A program made the position numbers and the translations under genes. A stretch of DNA of 63,245 nucleotides, counting the filler, from Octopus bimaculoides (taxonomy: Eukaryota), in assembly GCF_001194135.2 (NCBI RefSeq). It is 5 parts of 5 records of this genome, joined end to end, with 100 filler letters (N's around TTAATTAATTAA, not from the genome) between each part and the next. Parts side by side here need not be neighbours in the genome. Positions count along the whole stretch, not along the records: positions 45,726 to 60,501 come from NC_068987.1; 4 more parts are not named here. One strand, given 5' to 3'. Under the pieces are notes generated by a model. That model saw only the letters and a list, made by a program, of their open reading frames with translations, had not been told where the DNA came from and ran no database searches. Position 1 is the first letter of the stretch. The number at the start of each line of letters is the position of its first letter. Below are positions 45,571 to 60,501 of the stretch, piece after piece.

Positions 45571-45725
45571 TAAAATGTGTGTGTGTATGCATATATATAT
45601 ATATATGTATATATATATCTATATANNNNNNNNNNNNNNNNNNNNNNNNNNNNNNNNNNNNNNNNNNNNTTAATTAATTAANNNNNNNNNNNNNNNNNNN
45701 NNNNNNNNNNNNNNNNNNNNNNNNN

Positions 45726-45822: not shown

Positions 45823-46537
45823 ATTTAATACCCATACTTTGATAACCAGGCATCATTTTAGTTCATACAGTCTACTTTCTATTTGGAGAAATAATTCCTT
45901 TATTCCATTTCTCCAACTGTTCTTTGTCTAAACTCAATTGTTGTTACATATTTTCACTGCTTCAATTACTTTAACATATTTTCTGTCATACAAGTCAGAA
46001 TAGTATACAGTGTAAACATGAACGCATCATCACTATCTTTTCTAATCCTGCTATATTCTATATGGAACTTTTGGTTCCCAAAAGTTGTCTTGGCGTTTAA
46101 GTCAACCTACCATTTTTCTAGCTGTATATTCTTCTATACCAGAAAATAAGGTATACATTTCTTTGTCAAAAATGTGCCTATTCCAGTAATGTAACCCCAA
46201 CCCCTGAAGAATGTGCAGTTATGTTTCTTGCCCATAAGGAACCTGACTGGGGGCTTCCTCCTATCTTATCTCTTGTACACAACATACTTTTATGAGTCTT
46301 CACTCTAGTATTTCAACATTCTCCCCTGTTCTACGTTTCACTATAATGGTGATAGATGGTTGCAGTGATAGGTAGGTTGTTTGATGTCTTGCTGGACCTA
46401 TGAGATATAATCATCATTATTTTAATATCCACTTTTTCATCCCTGTATGAGTTGGTTGGAGCTTATTGAGGTAGATTTTCTATGGTTGGATGCACCTTCT
46501 GTTTTCACCGTATCTGTCTCCAAGCAAGGTTATACAG

Positions 46538-46960
46538 ACCCACGACAAGCACACACACAGACCCACGACAAGCACACACACACACGCACACACATGCCCA
46601 CGACAAGCACACACAAACCTACGACAAGCACACCCACACCCACGACAAGCACACACACTCATGACAAGCACGCACACACACCCACACAACAAACACCTAC
46701 CCACACTCACACACACACCCACAACAAACACACACAAAATACACGCACCCACAACACCCACCCGCACACGCTCATCCGCATACCCTTAACCACACATCCC
46801 CACAACACATGACCACACATTCCCACAAGACATACACCTACATCCACACACTCCCACAACACACACTCTTACAACGCACACCCACAATGCACACACCCAC
46901 AGCATACTCACAACACACTCAACACACACACACTCAACACACACACACAGGCACTCATGC
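46538..46960. repeat. cccacgacaagcacacac minisatellite decaying into (CA)-rich sequence
   Basis: acgacaagcacac occurs at least five times. Confidence 0.8.
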
Positions 46961-47130
46961 ACATACAATGAGCTTTTTCAGTTTCCATCTACCAAATCCA
47001 CTGACAAAGTTTCGACTGGCCCAGCGCTCTAGTAGACTCCACTTACTAGCCCAAGATGTCTTGCTGTGGGACTAAACTTGAAACCTTGTGATTACGTGGT
47101 TATGAAGCAAACTTCTTAATCACTCAGCCA
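46960..47130 (-). mobile_element. Family B SINE head
   Basis: ttcagtttccatctaccaaatccact...gggactaaac...gaagcaaacttcttaatcac. Confidence 0.7.
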
Positions 47131-48442: not shown

Positions 48443-48670
48443 TTTATTTAAAAGCAGCTACTCTACCTCTGGTATTTGAGTACTATTTTTTCCACCTTGT
48501 TGCACATTTATGTGCTTACTCTGGTATATATATATATACATATACACATACGCGCACACACACACACCCATGCGAGCTTGGAAGGCAGATGTTAAATGAT
48601 GATATATATATATATACACACACACATATTTTAAATGATATCTAATATTTGTTGTTTTTTCTATTTTCAG

Positions 48671-48830
48671 TTGGTGGTTCATGGAGTTCACAGTTATTGG
48701 TGTTGTGGTCATCATGTTTGTGCTGGGAACACTGTTTCTTGTCATTGCTCACCTCTCATCTGATCCCACTAATCGATATGTGTTCAATACATCCAAGAAG
48801 AACATGTGCGCCAGAGGACTCAATGTCTTT
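48671..48830 (+). CDS. Candidate 160-nt exon of unknown role; one open frame encodes a transmembrane-like segment (WWFMEFTVIGVVVIMFVLGTLFLVIAHLSSDPTNRYVFNTSKKNMCARGLNVF)
   Basis: Branch-like tctaat, long pyrimidine tract and ttttcag acceptor, gtaagt donor. Non-repetitive sequence with two of three frames open. No homology recognised. Confidence 0.5.
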
Positions 48831-48984
48831 GTAAGTTATCTTAATTACATTTTAATACTTGCCTAATTATTTCTTTTTAATCAACTAGACTGTCAGTTAT
48901 AAATTTGAAGTCATGCTACCAGTTTCCCCTCTTCAGCTGAATGACCCTAACTTTGCAGGCTTGTGGGTGCTGATCCCACATAAA

Positions 48985-49199: not shown

Positions 49200-49345
49200 T
49201 GTCATGGCTATGTGGTTAAAAAATTTCCTTCCCAATTACATGACTCTGGGTTCAATCTCACTGCATGACACCTTGGGTAAATGTCTTCTATTATAACCTA
49301 GGTCAGACTAATATCTTGTGAGTGGAATATCATAGACAGAAATTG
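49200..49345 (+). mobile_element. Family B SINE head
   Basis: catggctatgtggttaa...gggttcaatctcactgcatgacaccttgggtaaatgtcttcta. Confidence 0.7.
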
Positions 49346-49374: not shown

Positions 49375-49745
49375 CTTTTACTTCTTTCAGTCATTAGACT
49401 GCAGCGATGCTGGAGCACTGCCTTGTAGAATTTTAGTTGAATGAATCAACCCTTGTACTTTATTATTTTTTTTGTAAAGCCTGGTATTTTATTTTATCAA
49501 TCTCTTTTGCTAAACTGCTACATTACAGGGATGTAAACACACCTACAGTGGTAGGGAAAGCACACGCACACACACGCATATATGCACACAATGAGCTTCT
49601 GTTTCCATCTACCAAATCCACTCACAAGGCTTTGGTCAGCCCAAAGCTGTTGTAGATGACACTTGCCCAAGGTGCCACGCAGTGGGACTGAACCTGGAAC
49701 AATGTGTTTGGGAGCAAATTTCCAACTACACAACCACATCTGTGC
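49375..49745 (-). mobile_element. Family B SINE, near full length
   Basis: 3' half, then (CA) microsatellite, then head (ctaccaaatccactcacaaggctttgg...cccaaggtgccacgcagtgggactgaacc). Confidence 0.8.
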
Positions 49746-50098: not shown

Positions 50099-50289
50099 AT
50101 ACTGGAAATGTTGTCTGAATTTGACTTCCCAACCAAGAGGAAAATAAAACCATTTTCTGTTTAATATTGCTGTGCATGAATTATGAGGAGCCTCTCTATG
50201 AGCACTCTATCTGAAAGAAATAGTATCACTATTACCAAGGGTACCACAATCATCATTGTTAACACTGTCCATCACTGCCTTCGTTATCA

Positions 50290-51250
50290 CCTCCACTAAC
50301 ACCACCAACAGACACCACCACTAACTACTGCCACTAACAATACCACCAACTCTAACATCATCACCTCCACTAGCATCTCTACCACTAACAACAACAACAA
50401 AATCAATACCACCAACACGAGCATCGCAATCACCACCTCCGCCACCACTAACAACAACAACAACAACAACAACACTACTACCATGAACCTCACCACTAAC
50501 AATACCACCAATACCATTAACACTAACATCACCATCACCACCATTGCCATCAACACTCCACCATTAACAACAATACCACTACTGACACTAACAACACAAG
50601 CAACACTGCCAATGCCTCTACCGCCAGCACTACTTCCATTATTCTACTCTTCTTCAGCACAGCCATCATTGATTTCACTACCACCACCATCATCATCATC
50701 ATCATCATTATTCTCACAGCCTTCTACATCACCATTATCACCATCATTTTCATCATAGCCATCACTATTACAAACTCTGCCACCACCACCACCACCACCA
50801 CCACCACCACCATCATTGCCAGTATCATCCTTATTGCCAACACCACTACCGCCACCACCTCCGTTCACATAATTGCTACCATTAACCTCATCATAATATT
50901 ATCTCCTGTTTCCTCCTCTCACACACGTCCACATAATCGTCGTCATCATCATCATCATCATCTTCATAATCGAGTTTTGCCTCTAATATATAGATATTTA
51001 AATCTCTATTCAGTATCATTCTCTACCTCCACCTCCACCTCTCTCTCGCGCGCCCTCGCTCTCACTCTCTCTGCACTTCATAGAAAGTCAATTGTATGAA
51101 ATGAATTCATTTAGACAAACTAAAAAAAAATCTAAATAACAAAAACAACAATAATGGCCACAATGATGATGATGATGACGATGATGATCATAGTGGTAAC
51201 AAAAAGTTCCAACAACAACAACAACAACAACCACCACAACAACAAACGGC
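50290..51250. repeat. Degenerate (CAC/CAA/CAT) trinucleotide low-complexity tract
   Basis: Direct inspection; the ORFs here are low-complexity. Confidence 0.85.
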
Positions 51251-51701: not shown

Positions 51702-51967
51702 ACGCACACGCACACACACGCATGCATGCTTATGTACGAGAGAGAGCATGTATATTATGCAATATATTTAATGTATGTGTATATGTGTGTGTGTGTACAC
51801 AAACACACTATATCTATTGTGTAATATATACCTAATGCATGCATACATTATATTACTTTACATGCATATATATTATGCTTTATTGTCATATATTACACTA
51901 CATTATATATATCATTAAATTTATATTAAATACATACTAAATGTGTGCACATATTTTATATATATAG

Positions 51968-52114
51968 GCGCAGGGGTGGCTGTCTGGTAAGTAGCTTGCT
52001 TACCAGCCACATGGTCCCTGGTTCAGTTCCACTTCATAGCACCTTGGGCAAGTGTCCTCTACTATAGCCTCGGGCGGACCAAAGCCTTGTGAGTGGATTT
52101 GGTAGACGGAAACT
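51968..52114 (+). mobile_element. Family B SINE head, young copy running into the gap
   Basis: ggcgcaggggtggctgtctggtaagtagcttgc...gggttcagttcc...ccttgggcaagtgtc...ggatttggtagacggaaact. Confidence 0.85.
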
Positions 52115-52939
52115 NNNNNNNNNNNNNNNNNNNNNNNNNNNNNNNNNNNNNNNNNNNNNNNNNNNNNNNNNNNNNNNNNNNNNNNNNNNNNNNNNNNNNN
52201 NNNNNNNNNNNNNNNNNNNNNNNNNNNNNNNNNNNNNNNNNNNNNNNNNNNNNNNNNNNNNNNNNNNNNNNNNNNNNNNNNNNNNNNNNNNNNNNNNNNN
52301 NNNNNNNNNNNNNNNNNNNNNNNNNNNNNNNNNNNNNNNNNNNNNNNNNNNNNNNNNNNNNNNNNNNNNNNNNNNNNNNNNNNNNNNNNNNNNNNNNNNN
52401 NNNNNNNNNNNNNNNNNNNNNNNNNNNNNNNNNNNNNNNNNNNNNNNNNNNNNNNNNNNNNNNNNNNNNNNNNNNNNNNNNNNNNNNNNNNNNNNNNNNN
52501 NNNNNNNNNNNNNNNNNNNNNNNNNNNNNNNNNNNNNNNNNNNNNNNNNNNNNNNNNNNNNNNNNNNNNNNNNNNNNNNNNNNNNNNNNNNNNNNNNNNN
52601 NNNNNNNNNNNNNNNNNNNNNNNNNNNNNNNNNNNNNNNNNNNNNNNNNNNNNNNNNNNNNNNNNNNNNNNNNNNNNNNNNNNNNNNNNNNNNNNNNNNN
52701 NNNNNNNNNNNNNNNNNNNNNNNNNNNNNNNNNNNNNNNNNNNNNNNNNNNNNNNNNNNNNNNNNNNNNNNNNNNNNNNNNNNNNNNNNNNNNNNNNNNN
52801 NNNNNNNNNNNNNNNNNNNNNNNNNNNNNNNNNNNNNNNNNNNNNNNNNNNNNNNNNNNNNNNNNNNNNNNNNNNNNNNNNNNNNNNNNNNNNNNNNNNN
52901 NNNNNNNNNNNNNNNNNNNNNNNNNNNNNNNNNNNNNNT

Positions 52940-53235
52940 ATTCTATTGGTCCTTTTTGCCAAATTGTTAAGTTACAAGGATATTAACTCACCAACACCGG
53001 TTGTCAAGCAGTGGTAGGGAACAAACACAGACATAAAGACACACACACACACACAGATATATACACATATATACATGACAAGCTTCTTTCAGTTTCTGTC
53101 TACCAAATCCACTTACAAGGTTTTGGTTGGCCTGAGGCTATTGTAGAAGACATTTGCCCAAGGTGCCACGCGGTGGGACTGAACCTGGAACCATGTGTTT
53201 GGGAAGCAAGTTTCTTACCATGCAGCCACACCTGC
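52940..53235 (-). mobile_element. Family B SINE
   Basis: 3' half, (CA/TA) microsatellite and head, in reverse orientation. Confidence 0.8.
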
Positions 53236-54507
53236 AATTATTGTTAGAATATTTGGTCATGTATCTCCTGGAAAATATTTGAAGGTGTATCACTTGAAGA
53301 AATGACATTTTGTGAAAATATGTATTTGCATTATGTTACTTATAAAGTTACACAATTGTATTCATGTTTTGAATAAACATGTCATGGAAAAATGTGTAGT
53401 GATACCCTGAAATAGCCATTTGTCTTATTCTTTTTTTATTATATCATACCTTGGTATAGTGTGGACTGAGATCCCCATTGAGAGGTCCTTGATATTAGAT
53501 AAAGTGTTAACACTTGAGGTCTACAAATTAGTTGCCCAGTTTTCTGTAGCTAATGAAAGTGATGACACAGATCCGCTACTTATTTCTCTGAGATTAGTCA
53601 AATTGAATGTAAATACATCTGATGAGAACCTAAAAGGTTTGAAAATTGATTTAGGCTGTTCATTTTCAGTCTATGGAGAACCCATACCAGCATGGAAAAC
53701 AGACATTAAATGATGATGTTGATGATAAAGAAATAGCTATAGCTAAATCAACATTGTTTATATGTCTACAATATAGGTGATGCGTGTATGTATGTATGTA
53801 TATATATATATATATATGAATAAAAATTTTAAAAAATATAAAAACGGGTTTTGTATATTCGTGTATAGAGGAATATATTATTTAAAAGAGTTCCAACTCT
53901 GTCTGTTTTTTATGTTTTATTTATATTCTTATAAAATTAATGTGGGATATAGAATATGGAATATATAATATAAATAGTAAAATGAAATGAAGTATTGAAT
54001 GTCTTATTGAATATGTGAAATATTGAGTATTAAATATAGAGTCTTAGATATATAAGGACTAGTATACTTTCCTGCNNNNNNNNNNNNNNNNNNNNNNNNN
54101 NNNNNNNNNNNNNNNNNNNNNNNNNNNNNNNNNNNNNNNNNNNNNNNNNNNNNNNNNNNNNNNNNNNNNNNNNNNNNNNNNNNNNNNNNNNNNNNNNNNN
54201 NNNNNNNNNNNNNNNNNNNNNNNNNNNNNNNNNNNNNNNNNNNNNNNNNNNNNNNNNNNNNNNNNNNNNNNNNNNNNNNNNNNNNNNNNNNNNNNNNNNN
54301 NNNNNNNNNNNNNNNNNNNNNNNNNNNNNNNNNNNNNNNNNNNNNNNNNNNNNNNNNNNNNNNNNNNNNNNNNNNNNNNNNNNNNNNNNNNNNNNNNNNN
54401 NNNNNNNNNNNNNNNNNNNNNNNNNNNNNNNNNNNNNNNNNNNNNNNNNNNNNNNNNNNNNNNNNNNNNNNNNNNNNNNNNNNNNNNNNNNNNNNNNNNN
54501 NNNNNNN

Positions 54508-55339: not shown

Positions 55340-56205
55340 TAAAATACTATGAGAGAGAGAGAAAAGAAAAATAAACGAGGGAATGAATATGCCTGGGTGA
55401 AGAATAAAATGAGGGGAGGAATAGACAAAAGGAGGAGGAGGAGGAGGACAGAGAGGGATGAATGCATGTGAGAGGGGTGAAGGGAAAGAGAATGAGCAGG
55501 AAAGGAGGTGGAGTGGGGTATAAGAAAAGTAAGAAGAAAGAGAGGGAGGGTTGTTAGAGAAGGAAAGAAAGAATGAGGAAGGAAAAAGAATAAGATGGAG
55601 AGATTGATAATAAATGTAACAGACTGAACCTTCCTCTATTAATGTGGATTGTGGTGAGAAGAGTGATTGAGAATGAGTGGTAGTAAGAGGAGAGACAATG
55701 AGAAGCATGGATATGAGAGAGAGAGAGAGGGAGCTGCAAATGGAGGAGGAGGAAGAAGAAGTGAAGCTGAAATATTGATTCTGAAGTCAAATAAATCTCT
55801 TCTCTAACCTACTTTGACTATTTCACTGAATTCTTTAGCTTTTACTCACTTCATTGCACTACTACTACTACCATCACCACTACTATTACTGTCACCACAA
55901 TTACCAACACCTGCACCACCACCACCACCACCACTACTGCTGCTACCACTGTTGTCACCAACTGCACTATCACCACCATTGTAGCTCCTACCACTACTCA
56001 CCCCCACCATCACCTCCTACTTGCCACTACCACACTCCATTCCTTATATTTCTTACTGTTACACATGCACTCCTTTATACTGCAGTTACTAACATTGCAC
56101 TCTGTACCACACTATCTATCTATCTATCTATCTATCTGTCTATCTATCTATCTATCTACATATGTGTGTATCTATCTATCTATCTGTATAAATACACACA
56201 CACAT

Positions 56206-56272
<67 letters not shown>

Positions 56273-57147
56273 NNNNNNNNNNNNNNNNNNNNNNNNNNNN
56301 NNNNNNNNNNNNNNNNNNNNNNNNNNNNNNNNNNNNNNNNNNNNNNNNNNNNNNNNNNNNNNNNNNNNNNNNNNNNNNNNNNNNNNNNNNNNNNNNNNNN
56401 NNNNNNNNNNNNNNNCACATATATATATACTCTCACTTCCTCTCTCTCTCTATCTCTCTTCTCTCTTCTACCTCTCTCTTTCTTCAAAATTTATATATCA
56501 AATGGATGTACACGTGCACATATGTGTTTGAACATACATGTTTGCGTCTTCATGTACATATACATGTATGCATAGATAGATATTTATATATATATGTGTG
56601 TGTGTGTGTTTATATTTGTTTGTATCTATGTGTGTATGTATGATTTAAGCAATATAATTTGAGAGTAAATGTATACTAAATTGATATTGCTATTTTTTCT
56701 GTTTTATTAATTTTTCTAGACTTGAATATCAAATTAACTCATTCGTTAATGAGCAAAGCTAGAATTACCTCACAAAAAAATGTGTGTATTAAATATCATT
56801 TGTAGTTAAATAAACAAAGTGAAAAGAATGTACTGCAAATGAAAGCGAAGTACGAGTGGGAGCAGGGATTTGATCTATGTTGTAGTGCACTGGGGTGGGG
56901 TTCTATGTTGGTGTAGCAATACATGAGAAGCTGATCATCTTCATGGTGACAATGGTTTCATGTTTAATAACCGGCAATTGACTCCATCAAATATTTCATG
57001 AAACACTTACATATATGCATGCATATATATGTAACTGTACAGGTGCAGTGGTATCACAAACAGGTTAACAGAGGAAACAGACTTTGTACATGGTAGATGT
57101 GCATGTACAATAAACAGTAATGACACACAGAAAAATGAATTTTCTCA

Positions 57148-57560
57148 AATGCCCAAATGGATCCTTCGTAGTAGTAGACAGCTTTTGTTACAAGTGTGAC
57201 CTAATTAGTACTGGGGAAGAATGATCTGAAAGTATAGTTGCTAGAATAAGAACAGACTGGAGAAAATTCAGAGAGCTATTTATTACCTATGTTGGTAAGA
57301 AAAAGTTTTCTCTCTTAGAATGAAAGGCAGAATATGATGCTTATGTGTGAAATGTAATGCTTACATGGTAGTGAGACATGGGTCTTGCATGCAGAAGACT
57401 AATGAAGGCTCGAAAGAAATGAAGCTAGCATGCTCTGCAGGGTTTGCAACATCAGTATGGATGAATACTGAAGTACAAGTAGAGTGAGAAAAGATGAGCA
57501 TTAGGGAAATTAAATGTAGTGTGCAAAAGAGAAAACTGCTTTGATATGGGCATGTCCCTT
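57148..57560 (+). mobile_element. Old RTE-clade LINE fragment
   Basis: Frameshifted VVDSFCY..DLIS, SIVARIRT.WRKFREL, HGSETW, RNEASML and SVQKRKL..YGHV. Confidence 0.7.
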
Positions 57561-57802: not shown

Positions 57803-58625
57803 ACTTTCCACTGTCTGGTACGGCATCAGGGCATTTCCACTGTCTGGTATGGCATCTNNNNNNNNNNNNNNNNNNNNNNNNNNNNNNNNNNNNNNNNNNN
57901 NNNNNNNNNNNNNNNNNNNNNNNNNNNNNNNNNNNNNNNNNNNNNNNNNNNNNNNNNNNNNNNNNNNNNNNNNNNNNNNNNNNNNNNNNNNNNNNNNNNN
58001 NNNNNNNNNNNNNNNNNNNNNNNNNNNNNNNNNNNNNNNNNNNNNNNNNNNNNNNNNNNNNNNNNNNNNNNNNNNNNNNNNNNNNNNNNNNNNNNNNNNN
58101 NNNNNNNNNNNNNNNNNNNNNNNNNNNNNNNNNNNNNNNNNNNNNNNNNNNNNNNNNNNNNNNNNNNNNNNNNNNNNNNNNNNNNNNNNNNNNNNNNNNN
58201 NNNNNNNNNNNNNNNNNNNNNNNNNNNNNNNNNNNNNNNNNNNNNNNNNNNNNNNNNNNNNNNNNNNNNNNNNNNNNNNNNNACGGCAATGGGGCATTTC
58301 CACTGTCTGGTACGGCAATGGGGCATTTCCACTGTCTGGTACGGCAATGGGGCATTTCCACTCTATGGTAAGGCATCAGGGCATTTCCACTCTATGGTAA
58401 GGCATCAGGGCATTTCCACTCTCTGGTACGGCATCAGGGCATTTCCACTCTCTGGTACGGCATCAGGGCATTTTCACTGTCTGGTACGGCATCAGGGCAT
58501 TTCCACTGTCTGGTACGGCATCAGGGCATTTCCACTGTCTGGTATGGCATCTTGGCATTTCCACTCTCTGGTACGGCAATGGGGCATTTCCACTGTCTGG
58601 TACGGCATCAAGGCATTTCCACCTC
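57803..58625. repeat. 29-bp minisatellite (ggcatttccactgtctggtacggcatcag), spanning a gap
   Basis: More than 12 visible copies with a few variant positions. Confidence 0.95.
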
Positions 58626-58744: not shown

Positions 58745-59045
58745 CTTACTCTTTTACTTGTTTCAGTCATTTGACTGCGGCCATGCTGGATCACCGCCTT
58801 TTTAGTCGAGCAAATCAACCCCAGGACTTATTCTGTGGAAGCCTAGTACTTATTCTATCGAACTCTTTTGCCGAACTGTTAAGTTACGGGGGACGTAAAC
58901 ACACCAGCATCGGTTGTCAAGCGATGTTGGGGGGACAAACACAGACACAAACATACACACACATATACATATATATATATATATACATATATATGACGGG
59001 CTTCTTTCAGTTTCCGTCTACCAAATCCACTCACAAGGCTTTGGA
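58745..59045 (-). mobile_element. Family B SINE, young and 5'-truncated
   Basis: ttactcttttacttgtttcagtcatttgactgcggccatgc...cggttgtcaagcg...(TA)n gacgggcttctttcagtttccgtctacc. Confidence 0.85.
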
Positions 59046-59328
59046 ACCATCTGGGAAGCTACTTACCACACAGTTACCACTATATTCATCCCAGCTGTCA
59101 TCCCTAACCATCTCTCACTCTCCACGCACACACTCTTACAACTTCTGTTCACCTTCTTGTACATCCGCATCTGAGCACCACCATTTGAAAAATTTCTCAT
59201 TCTGGGTTATACCCCAATTGTCCACACCCACCTTTATATAATGCAATGTAGCCATGTATCTCCTTTACAACAAAAACCCTCTTCACATTTCCCTCGTACT
59301 TTAACCTCTCAACACCTAATATAAAACC

Positions 59329-59366
<38 letters not shown>

Positions 59367-60297
59367 NNNNNNNNNNNNNNNNNNNNNNNNNNNNNNNNNN
59401 NNNNNNNNNNNNNNNNNNNNNNNNNNNNNNNNNNNNNNNNNNNNNNNNNNNNNNNNNNNNNNNNNNNNNNNNNNNNNNNNNNNNNNNNNNNNNNNNNNNN
59501 NNNNNNNNNNNNNNNNNNNNNNNNNNNNNNNNNNNNNNNNNNNNNNNNNNNNNNNNNNNNNNNNNNNNNNNNNNNNNNNNNNNNNNNNNNNNNNNNNNNN
59601 NNNNNNNNNNNNNNNNNNNNNNNNNNNNNNNNNNNNNNNNNNNNNNNNNNNNNNNNNNNNNNNNNNNNNNNNNNNNNNNNNNNNNNNNNNNNNNNNNNNN
59701 NNNNNNNNNNNNNNNNNNNNNNNNNNNNNNNNNNNNNNNNNNNNNNNNNNNNNNNNNNNNNNNNNNNNNNNNNNNNNNNNNNNNNNNNNNNNNNNNNNNN
59801 NNNNNNNNNNNNNNNNNNNNNNNNNNNNNNNNNNNNNNNNNNNNNNNNNNNNNNNNNNNNNNNNNNNNNNNNNNNNNNNNNNNNNNNNNNNNNNNNNNNN
59901 NNNNNNNNNNNNNNNNNNNNNNNNNNNNNNNNNNNNNNNNNNNNNNNNNNNNNNNNNNNNNNNNNNNNNNNNNNNNNNNNNNNNNNNNNNNNNNNNNNNN
60001 NNNNNNNNNNNNNNTCTCTCTCTCCCGTCCGCTCTCTCTCCCTCCCGTCCTCTCTCTCTCCTGTCCTCTCTCTCTCCCGTCCTCTCTCCCCTCCCTCCCT
60101 CTCTCCTATACTATATTCCCACTCTGCTGGTCATTTAACTGTCTTTAAATATCTTAAATGATCAATTTTTAATTAGTAAATTAATCATTAAGAGTTTTCT
60201 GTCTGTTTTCTACTATTGTATAACCTCATATTTGTTCTTGCTGACCTGAGTATATTTATACGTAAGTTTGTATGTACGTATGTAATTGTACAAACGT

Positions 60298-60501
60298 ATG
60301 TTTGTATGTGAGTGTACAAATATATATTTGTATGTGAGTGTACAAATATATATTTGTATGTGAGTGTACAAATGTATATTTGTATGTATGTGAGTGTACA
60401 AATGTATATTTGTATGTATGTGAGTGTACAAATGTATATTTGTATGTATGTGAGTGTACAAATGTATATTTGTATGTATGTGAGTGTACAAATGTATATT
60501 T
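60298..60501. repeat. 26/30-bp minisatellite (gtat)gtatgtgagtgtacaaatgtatattt
   Basis: About seven tandem copies running into a gap. Confidence 0.9.

What the first reader, a model, noticed from the sequence alone, without database searches (positions are those of the whole stretch)
48671..48830. Orphan exon in the PDE4 locus: membrane-anchored N-terminus or truncating exon
Seen: a unique 160-nt block with branch-like tctaat, a strong pyrimidine tract, a cag acceptor and a gtaagt donor, 7 kb after the UCR2 exon. Frame A starts at ATG 48681 (ttcATGG) and gives 50 aa, MEFTVIGVVVIMFVLGTLFLVIAHLSSDPTNRYVFNTSKKNMCARGLNVF, with a ~23-residue hydrophobic helix and basic residues after it; it ends in phase 0. 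Frame B is in phase with the preceding PDE4 exon and gives a Cys-rich 54-aa tail ending in TAA at 48832-48834 if the donor is read through. If the donor is used instead, it shifts the frame relative to the expected phase-1 next exon. Known: PDE4 isoforms are targeted by unique N-terminal exons, and truncated UCR-only forms exist in human PDE4D. Inference: this could be a signal-anchored (N-out/C-in), catalytic-domain-only PDE4 isoform, a UCR-only decoy or poison exon, or an exon of a nested gene. A scaffold spacer (45626-45725) lies between it and the UCR2 exons, so its position is not guaranteed.
Basis: partly seen in the sequence, partly recalled or inferred. Interest (0 to 1): 0.7.

Follow-up and report, generated by a model that had tools for sequence, protein, structure and literature searches.

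The report
Octopus M6 proteolipid gene exon
The 160-base block is a real but already annotated internal coding exon of the octopus neuronal membrane glycoprotein M6 gene (proteolipid-protein family); it encodes the protein's second membrane helix, has nothing to do with PDE4, and is ordinary.

Summary
Positions 48671-48830 (+) form a unique 160-nt block with a ctaat branch-like site, a 17/20 pyrimidine tract, a cag acceptor and a gtaagt donor. It is the only such open block in the piece.

The PDE4 interpretation does not hold. The PDE4 exons lay on an unrelated piece joined to this one by the scan's program.

Frame A (from 48672) gives WWFMEF...GLNVF. This is 53/53 identical to annotated RefSeq proteins: Octopus bimaculoides LOC106874846, O. 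sinensis LOC115214044, and O. vulgaris 'membrane glycoprotein M6-a-like'. All match Pfam Myelin_PLP (PF01275).

The exon is internal. It encodes transmembrane helix 2 and the start of the cytoplasmic loop of a four-helix proteolipid. The ATG at 48681 is a conserved internal Met, not a start codon.

Assembled cDNAs from a related octopod join the exon on both sides to M6 exons, exactly at the predicted borders. Of the 16 nucleotide differences, 15 are synonymous in frame A and 1 gives V->I. Frame B changes at 14 of 52 residues, so it is not coding.

An oyster-like contig and another mollusc contig carry the same 160-nt exon with the same phases and a gtaagt donor.

Verdict: already known and ordinary.

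The parts
48642..48646 (+). Branch-point-like ctaat (CTRAY), 25 nt upstream of the acceptor.
   Evidence: Read directly from the sequence. Its function is inferred from position and consensus only.
48647..48667 (+). Polypyrimidine tract of the upstream intron.
   Evidence: 17 of 20 pyrimidines at positions -23 to -4.
48668..48670 (+). 3' splice site (acceptor) cag.
   Evidence: Similarity to the cDNAs L001 and L002 begins at 48672; base 48671 itself differs (window T, cDNA C) and both complete a Phe codon. L003 and L004 have an AG at the same place.
48671..48830 (+). Internal coding exon of the octopus neuronal membrane glycoprotein M6 (proteolipid family) gene, 160 nt. Base 48671 completes a split Phe codon (TT|T). 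Codons run from 48672, and the exon ends in phase 0.
   Evidence: 53/53 aa identical to RefSeq O. bimaculoides, O. sinensis and O. vulgaris M6-like proteins. 28 hits at E<=1e-3, best 1.8e-17, in the representative library. 144/160 nt identical to a related octopod's cDNA, with 15 of 16 differences synonymous.
48687..48755 (+). Codons for transmembrane helix 2 (FTVIGVVVIMFVLGTLFLVIAHL).
   Evidence: This is the second of four hydrophobic segments of the full protein, with peak Kyte-Doolittle 3.05. It aligns with helix 2 of the family.
48756..48830 (+). Codons for the start of the cytoplasmic loop between helices 2 and 3 (SSDPTNRYVFNTSKKNMCARGLNVF). This stretch includes four of the five alignment-invariant residues of the exon (S, F, N, N); the fifth, G, lies in helix 2.
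   Evidence: Alignment A1 has invariant G, S, F, N and N columns within the exon.
48831..48836 (+). 5' splice site (donor) gtaagt.
   Evidence: Similarity to the cDNA ends at 48830. Only the next two bases match, by chance, because the next exon starts with GTG. The oyster-like contig L004 and the mollusc contig L003 have gtaagt at the same codon.

Best explanation
Positions 48671-48830 (+) form a constitutive internal exon of the octopus orthologue of neuronal membrane glycoprotein M6. [quoted passage not shown]

The exon is spliced at cag|T and TTT|gtaagt. Its first base completes a Phe codon begun in the upstream exon (...CRKVMDEPSF|WWFMEF...). It encodes the last residues of the first extracellular loop, transmembrane helix 2, and the first 25 residues of the cytoplasmic loop. 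It then joins in phase 0 to the exon encoding helix 3 (...GLNVF|VLFLAYFLAVIW...).

Shown here: identity to annotated proteins, splicing at both borders in a related species' cDNA, purifying selection in frame A, and the same exon borders in other molluscs.

Inferred from the family, not tested here: the protein's role as a plasma-membrane proteolipid of neurons and epithelia that promotes membrane protrusions, as reported for mammalian M6a and Drosophila M6 (PMC3095610, PMC3230579).
For: 1. Identity to annotated proteins. The frame-A peptide is 53/53 identical to residues of XP_052825355/56 and XP_014778218/221 (O. bimaculoides LOC106874846), XP_029638933-42 (O. sinensis LOC115214044) and CAI9725980.1 (O. 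vulgaris 'membrane glycoprotein M6-a-like') (tblastn E=5e-34).

2. Family. Those proteins and their mollusc homologues match Pfam Myelin_PLP PF01275 at 50-95 bits, against a cut-off of 23.8.

3. Wider homology. HMMER against 1.84 billion representatives gave 28 hits, 16 of them at E<=1e-10, with 54-69% identity across the whole exon among the top hits. The 10 top hits scanned against Pfam all match Myelin_PLP, and those with source names are oyster, gastropod and chiton M6/PLP-like proteins.

4. Splicing. cDNA contigs L001 (SRR25114243) and L002 (SRR19578112) encode a 274-aa M6 protein. They are alignable to the window only from 48671 to 48830.

5. Selection. Of 16 differences in 160 nt, 15 are synonymous third-position changes in frame A and 1 gives V->I. 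Frame B would change at 14 of 52 residues.

6. Conserved borders. Genomic contigs L004 (oyster-like) and L003 carry the same 160-nt exon with AG|, the same phases and |gtaagt.

7. Position in the protein. The full protein has four hydrophobic segments, and the exon holds the second.

8. Gene size. The O. vulgaris gene spans about 327 kb. That explains why only one exon lies in a 14.8-kb piece.
Against: There is none of weight.

- The exon peptide alone does not reach any Pfam threshold; it gave only sub-threshold SPAR and Mem_trans hits.
- The word-index search found nothing for it. Both results are limits of a 53-residue hydrophobic query.
- I could not align the piece to an Octopus chromosome, because the gene range was too long for DNA retrieval. 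The species of the window, and its position inside LOC106874846 or LOC115214044, therefore rest on the exact protein match rather than on a genomic alignment.
- The spliced cDNAs come from a related species (90% nt identity), not from the window's own species.
Confidence: 0.97

Rival explanations
1. This is an alternative exon of a PDE4 gene, acting as a signal-anchor N-terminus, a truncating exon or a poison exon.
For: The program's note says the pieces are unrelated.
Against: The exon is flanked by M6 exons in cDNAs and in all 10 annotated isoforms read. The ATG is an internal Met shared by most aligned homologues. Frame B, the frame said to be in phase with PDE4, is not conserved: 14 of 52 residues change.
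Confidence: 0.005
2. This is a chance open block with splice-like ends, or a dead duplicate (pseudo-exon) of the M6 exon that is not the expressed copy.
For: Two frames are open, which can happen by chance. The assembly is a gapped draft with five N runs, so a duplicated fragment cannot be formally excluded without a genomic alignment.
Against: The match to the annotated proteins is 53/53 aa with intact canonical splice sites. Blocks as good are expected 0.03 times per piece by chance. The block has no second copy and no repeat-family membership in the piece. The substitution pattern against a related species is that of a constrained coding exon.
Confidence: 0.02
3. The exon is M6, but the internal ATG at 48681 (ttcATGG) is also used as a start codon in a transcript from an intronic promoter. 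That would give an N-terminally truncated three-helix M6 isoform.
For: The ATG has a G at +4. The gene has many N-terminal isoforms made from alternative first exons.
Against: None of the 10 annotated isoform sequences read starts here; the others were not examined. The Met is shared as an internal residue with most aligned mollusc homologues. The acceptor site upstream is strong. A three-helix product would invert the topology of the remaining helices.
Confidence: 0.01

Closest known systems
Octopus bimaculoides LOC106874846, O. sinensis LOC115214044 and O. vulgaris 'membrane glycoprotein M6-a-like' (CAI9725980.1)
   Same: These proteins contain the exact 53-residue peptide of this exon, in the same place: residues 59-111 of the 237-aa isoform. 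This is the same gene, or its orthologue in a sister species.
   Different: Nothing detectable differs at the protein level. The window's species cannot be told from this exon, and RefSeq names the gene only 'uncharacterized protein' in two of the three species.
Mollusc and insect M6 and mammalian GPM6A/GPM6B (neuronal membrane glycoprotein M6)
   Same: They share the four-helix architecture, the Pfam Myelin_PLP match, and the N-terminal CC..CL..VPC motif. They also share the conserved helix-2/loop motif (G...S..P.SR..F.....KN.C..G.N). In molluscs the 160-nt exon has the same borders and phases. Alternative N-terminal isoforms are also reported for Drosophila M6 (PMC3095610).
   Different: Identity in this exon is 54-69% for the top mollusc homologues. 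The octopus has WW where most have LW at the start of the exon. Function in cephalopods is untested.
Vertebrate PLP1/DM20, exon 3 (part 3A)
   Same: The octopus exon aligns with PLP helix 2 and the following loop (...FGDYKTTICGKGLSATV). BLASTP places the gap for the 35-residue PLP-specific insert within one residue of the octopus exon's 3' end. The octopus donor therefore corresponds to the DM20 donor inside PLP1 exon 3, the site studied in PMC1919487.
   Different: Overall identity is only 19%. The octopus protein is DM20/M6-like and lacks the PLP-specific segment. The human sequence and its exon borders were recalled from memory, not retrieved.

Membership tests
Proteolipid protein family (PLP/DM20/M6; Pfam Myelin_PLP PF01275) | A significant match of the encoded protein to the Myelin_PLP profile. 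| tested here: met
   Octopus proteins holding the exact exon peptide score 78-79 bits (E about 1e-21 to 1e-22) against a cut-off of 23.8. Ten mollusc homologues score 50-95 bits. The 53-aa exon peptide alone is too short to reach the threshold.
Proteolipid protein family (PLP/DM20/M6; Pfam Myelin_PLP PF01275) | Four transmembrane helices, with the exon's helix as the second. | tested here: met
   The Kyte-Doolittle scan of P0094 finds four hydrophobic segments. The exon (residues 59-111) contains the second, with a peak of 3.05.
Proteolipid protein family (PLP/DM20/M6; Pfam Myelin_PLP PF01275) | A cysteine-rich N-terminal motif before helix 1 (CC..CL..VPC), which in PLP and M6a carries palmitoylation sites (from my own knowledge). 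| tested here: met
   The motif is present in the octopus proteins (ENCCDKFLTCLSHVPCASL) and conserved in alignment A1. It is encoded by another exon and does not lie in this piece.
Proteolipid protein family (PLP/DM20/M6; Pfam Myelin_PLP PF01275) | The exon is spliced to the neighbouring family exons at the borders seen here. | tested here: met
   The cDNAs L001 and L002 match the window only from 48671 to 48830 and continue into M6 sequence on both sides. An oyster-like contig and another mollusc contig show the same borders, length and phases.
Proteolipid protein family (PLP/DM20/M6; Pfam Myelin_PLP PF01275) | The intron position is shared with the vertebrate DM20/M6 donor (end of PLP1 exon 3A). 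| tested here: inconclusive
   BLASTP puts the PLP-specific insert within one residue of the octopus exon end. However, the human sequence and its exon coordinates come from memory, and the paper on lipophilin gene structure (PMC6772626) is not held.
PDE4 (cAMP-specific phosphodiesterase 4) isoform exon | The exon is spliced in frame to PDE4 UCR or catalytic exons, and PDE4 exons lie in the same locus. | tested here: not met
   Both flanking exons in the cDNAs and in all 10 annotated isoforms read are M6. The frame proposed to continue PDE4 (frame B) is not conserved. The PDE4 exons lay on an unrelated piece, according to the program's note. I did not search the piece with PDE4 proteins.

The most novel reading that the evidence does not exclude
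The conserved internal ATG (ttcATGG at 48681) might also serve as the start of an intron-promoted, N-terminally truncated M6 isoform that begins with helix 2. Nothing found here supports it. The only reason it is not excluded is that no transcript-start data for this species could be examined.
Probability: 0.01. Interest if true: 0.25.

Novelty: already known. Interest (0 to 1): 0.04.

Why it matters
It matters little for biology, because the exon is annotated in three Octopus genomes and belongs to a well-described family.

Its value is methodological:
- A reader without tools correctly recognised a real 160-nt exon, its coding frame and its membrane helix in raw, repeat-rich cephalopod sequence.
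- The gene assignment was wrong because unrelated pieces had been joined. Neighbourhood arguments across joins should be discarded.
- The case also shows that a word-index protein search can miss an exact match for a short hydrophobic query.
- RefSeq still calls the gene 'uncharacterized' in two species, although it is clearly the M6/proteolipid orthologue.

Tried and rejected
- Pfam on the two open frames of the exon alone gave only sub-threshold SPAR (E=0.034) and Mem_trans (E=0.06) hits for frame A and nothing for frame B. I rejected these as noise.
- The search for homologous proteins with the 53-aa peptide found no candidates. This was a false negative of the word index, since exact matches exist.
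- I considered that the GT-rich first half of the exon might be the reverse complement of the ACC/AAC low-complexity repeats at 50274-50960. blastn with word size 7 found only 10-20-nt chance matches, so I rejected the idea.
- I searched for further M6 exons in the piece with octopus and mollusc M6 proteins. Only this exon was found; everything else was low-complexity noise at E>0.01.
- Retrieval of Octopus genomic DNA for the locus failed. P0092 is not on record. The O. vulgaris gene range of about 327 kb is too long for DNA to be returned. The window's read-through ORF is not on record.
- The paper on lipophilin gene evolution (PMC6772626) is not held.
- The tRNA scan of the SINE-like repeats found none.

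Full report
**Observation**

The sequence is as described. It reads tctaatatttgttgttttttctattttcag|TTGGTGGTTC...TCTTT|gtaagttatc.

- The acceptor cag is at 48668-48670.
- The exon runs from 48671 to 48830 (160 nt).
- The donor gtaagt is at 48831-48836.
- A CTRAY-like ctaat lies 25 nt upstream of the acceptor.
- The pyrimidine tract has 17 of 20 pyrimidines.

The frame from 48672 is open and contains the ATG at 48681. The frame from 48673 is open up to the TAA formed by the donor. The third frame has stops.

The block has no other copy in the piece and belongs to none of its many repeat families. It is the only splice-site-bounded open block of its kind on either strand of the 14.8-kb piece. 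Equally good blocks arise 0.03 times per shuffled piece.

**What it is**

The exon peptide alone gave nothing in Pfam above threshold and nothing in the word-index protein search. An exhaustive HMMER search of 1.84 billion representative proteins gave 28 hits at E<=1e-3. Sixteen of these were at E<=1e-10, the best was 1.8e-17, and the top hits were 54-69% identical across the whole 53 residues.

The full-length hits are mollusc proteins named 'neuronal membrane glycoprotein M6-a/b' or 'myelin proteolipid protein-like'. They come from Magallana/Crassostrea, Littorina, Babylonia, Liolophura, Elysia and Physella. All ten that were scanned match Pfam Myelin_PLP PF01275 well above the cut-off. In the alignment, the exon covers the end of the first extracellular loop, helix 2 and the first part of the cytoplasmic loop, including the invariant G, S, F, N and N columns.

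A profile search then returned P0073, a 274-aa protein from assembled transcripts. It is 52/53 identical to the exon peptide.

P0073's 90% cluster holds RefSeq and GenBank proteins of three species:
- Octopus bimaculoides (LOC106874846, many isoforms)
- O. sinensis (LOC115214044)
- O. vulgaris (CAI9725980.1, 'membrane glycoprotein M6-a-like isoform X4')

All ten sequences that I read contain the exact 53 residues of the window, in the context ...CRKVMDEPSF|WWFMEF...GLNVF|VLFLAYFLAVIW.... They match Myelin_PLP at 78-79 bits. A hydropathy scan finds four hydrophobic segments, and the exon (residues 59-111 of the 237-aa isoform) holds the second. The isoforms differ only upstream, in alternative N-terminal exons.

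**Splicing and selection**

Two cDNA contigs encode P0073: L001 from SRR25114243 and L002 from SRR19578112. They align with the window only between 48671 and 48830. On both sides they continue into M6 coding sequence, whereas the window continues into AT-rich intron.

Within the exon, 144 of 160 bases are identical. Of the 16 differences, 15 are third-position synonymous changes in frame A, counting the split Phe codon TTT/TTC. One gives V->I. The same differences would change 14 of 52 residues in frame B and 14 of 53 in the third frame. Frame A is therefore the coding frame and is under purifying selection. Frame B is open by accident.

Two genomic contigs from other molluscs carry the same exon. 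L004 belongs to the oyster M6 cluster and L003 comes from an ENA assembly. Both have an AG acceptor at the same base, the same length of 160 nt, the same phases and a gtaagt donor after the same codon. The intron positions are therefore old.

**Surroundings**

tblastn with octopus and mollusc M6 proteins finds no other M6 exon in the piece. This fits a gene that spans about 327 kb in O. vulgaris. The rest of the piece consists of microsatellites, minisatellites, SINE-like copies, low-complexity tracts and five assembly gaps.

**Mechanism**

The following is shown:
- The exon is spliced at both predicted borders.
- It supplies helix 2 and the start of the cytoplasmic loop of a four-helix proteolipid.

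The following is inferred from the family:
- Both termini are cytoplasmic, so helix 2 runs from outside to inside. That agrees with the basic residues after it.
- The protein acts as a plasma-membrane proteolipid of neurons and epithelia. Mammalian M6a promotes neurites and filopodia, and Drosophila M6 is needed in the follicular epithelium and the visual system (PMC3095610, PMC3438117, PMC3230579).

**Comparison with the known**

This is the same gene as the annotated Octopus M6-like loci. Against human PLP1 (sequence recalled from memory), overall identity is 19%. The gap for the 35-residue PLP-specific segment falls within one residue of the octopus exon's 3' end. The octopus donor therefore corresponds to the DM20 donor within PLP1 exon 3 (PMC1919487), and the octopus protein is DM20/M6-like. 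I rate this last point as inconclusive, because the human exon borders were not retrieved and the relevant paper is not held.

The PDE4 context is an artefact of joining unrelated pieces. The ATG is an internal Met shared by most aligned mollusc homologues (WFMEF/WFMEY), not a start codon. The exon is neither a truncating nor a poison exon, and it is not an orphan.

**Verdict**

This is an already known, ordinary constitutive exon of the octopus M6/proteolipid gene. Interest is low.

Noticed in passing
window 46977-47044, 49597-49713, 53088-53204, 59006-59073 (+); 49217-49326 and 51950-52114 (inverted): There are several copies of an interspersed SINE-like element, 73-87% alike, typical of a repeat-rich cephalopod genome. 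One copy begins about 70 nt after the exon's donor. ARAGORN calls no tRNA in them.
   Followed up: partly
window 58292-58622, and 57805-57857 on the other side of the N gap 57858-58282: A 29-nt minisatellite (GGGCATTTCCACTGTCTGGTACGGCATCA) has 11.4 copies at 91% matches. Further copies lie before the gap, so the array probably spans it and may have caused it.
   Followed up: no
window 60299-60501: A 30-nt tandem repeat (7 copies, 96% matches) runs into the end of the piece.
   Followed up: no
window 46534-46949; 50274-50960; 55855-55990: A degenerate CA-rich repeat of 19-23 nt and long ACC/AAC/ATC-type low-complexity tracts give many long mechanical ORFs on both strands that are not genes.
   Followed up: no
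window about 57240-57560 (+): By eye, the translation resembles the C-terminal tail of a LINE reverse transcriptase (…GSETW…), broken by stops.
   Followed up: no
window 52115-52938, 54076-54507, 56273-56415, 57858-58282, 59367-60014: Five runs of N (143-824 nt) lie in 14.8 kb, mostly next to microsatellites. This is a gapped draft assembly.
   Followed up: yes
proteins P0085-P0098 (Octopus M6 isoforms), outside the window: The octopus M6 gene has a dozen or more annotated isoforms that differ only in short alternative N-terminal exons, for example MTCCCCCCESKSPG..., MVSSYQVNPP... and MADVTENGLY.... RefSeq labels the gene 'uncharacterized protein' in O. bimaculoides and O. sinensis, although it is clearly Myelin_PLP/M6.
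   Followed up: partly
tool behaviour, versus 31-32: The word-index search (search for homologous proteins) returned no candidate for the 53-aa exon peptide, although proteins with the exact 53 residues are in the same collection. Short hydrophobic queries can give false negatives there.
   Followed up: yes
L003 positions 26-195 and L004 positions 997-1156: The homologous exon in two other molluscs is also exactly 160 nt, with the same phases and a gtaagt donor. L003 uses an unusual aag acceptor with a weak pyrimidine tract.
   Followed up: partly
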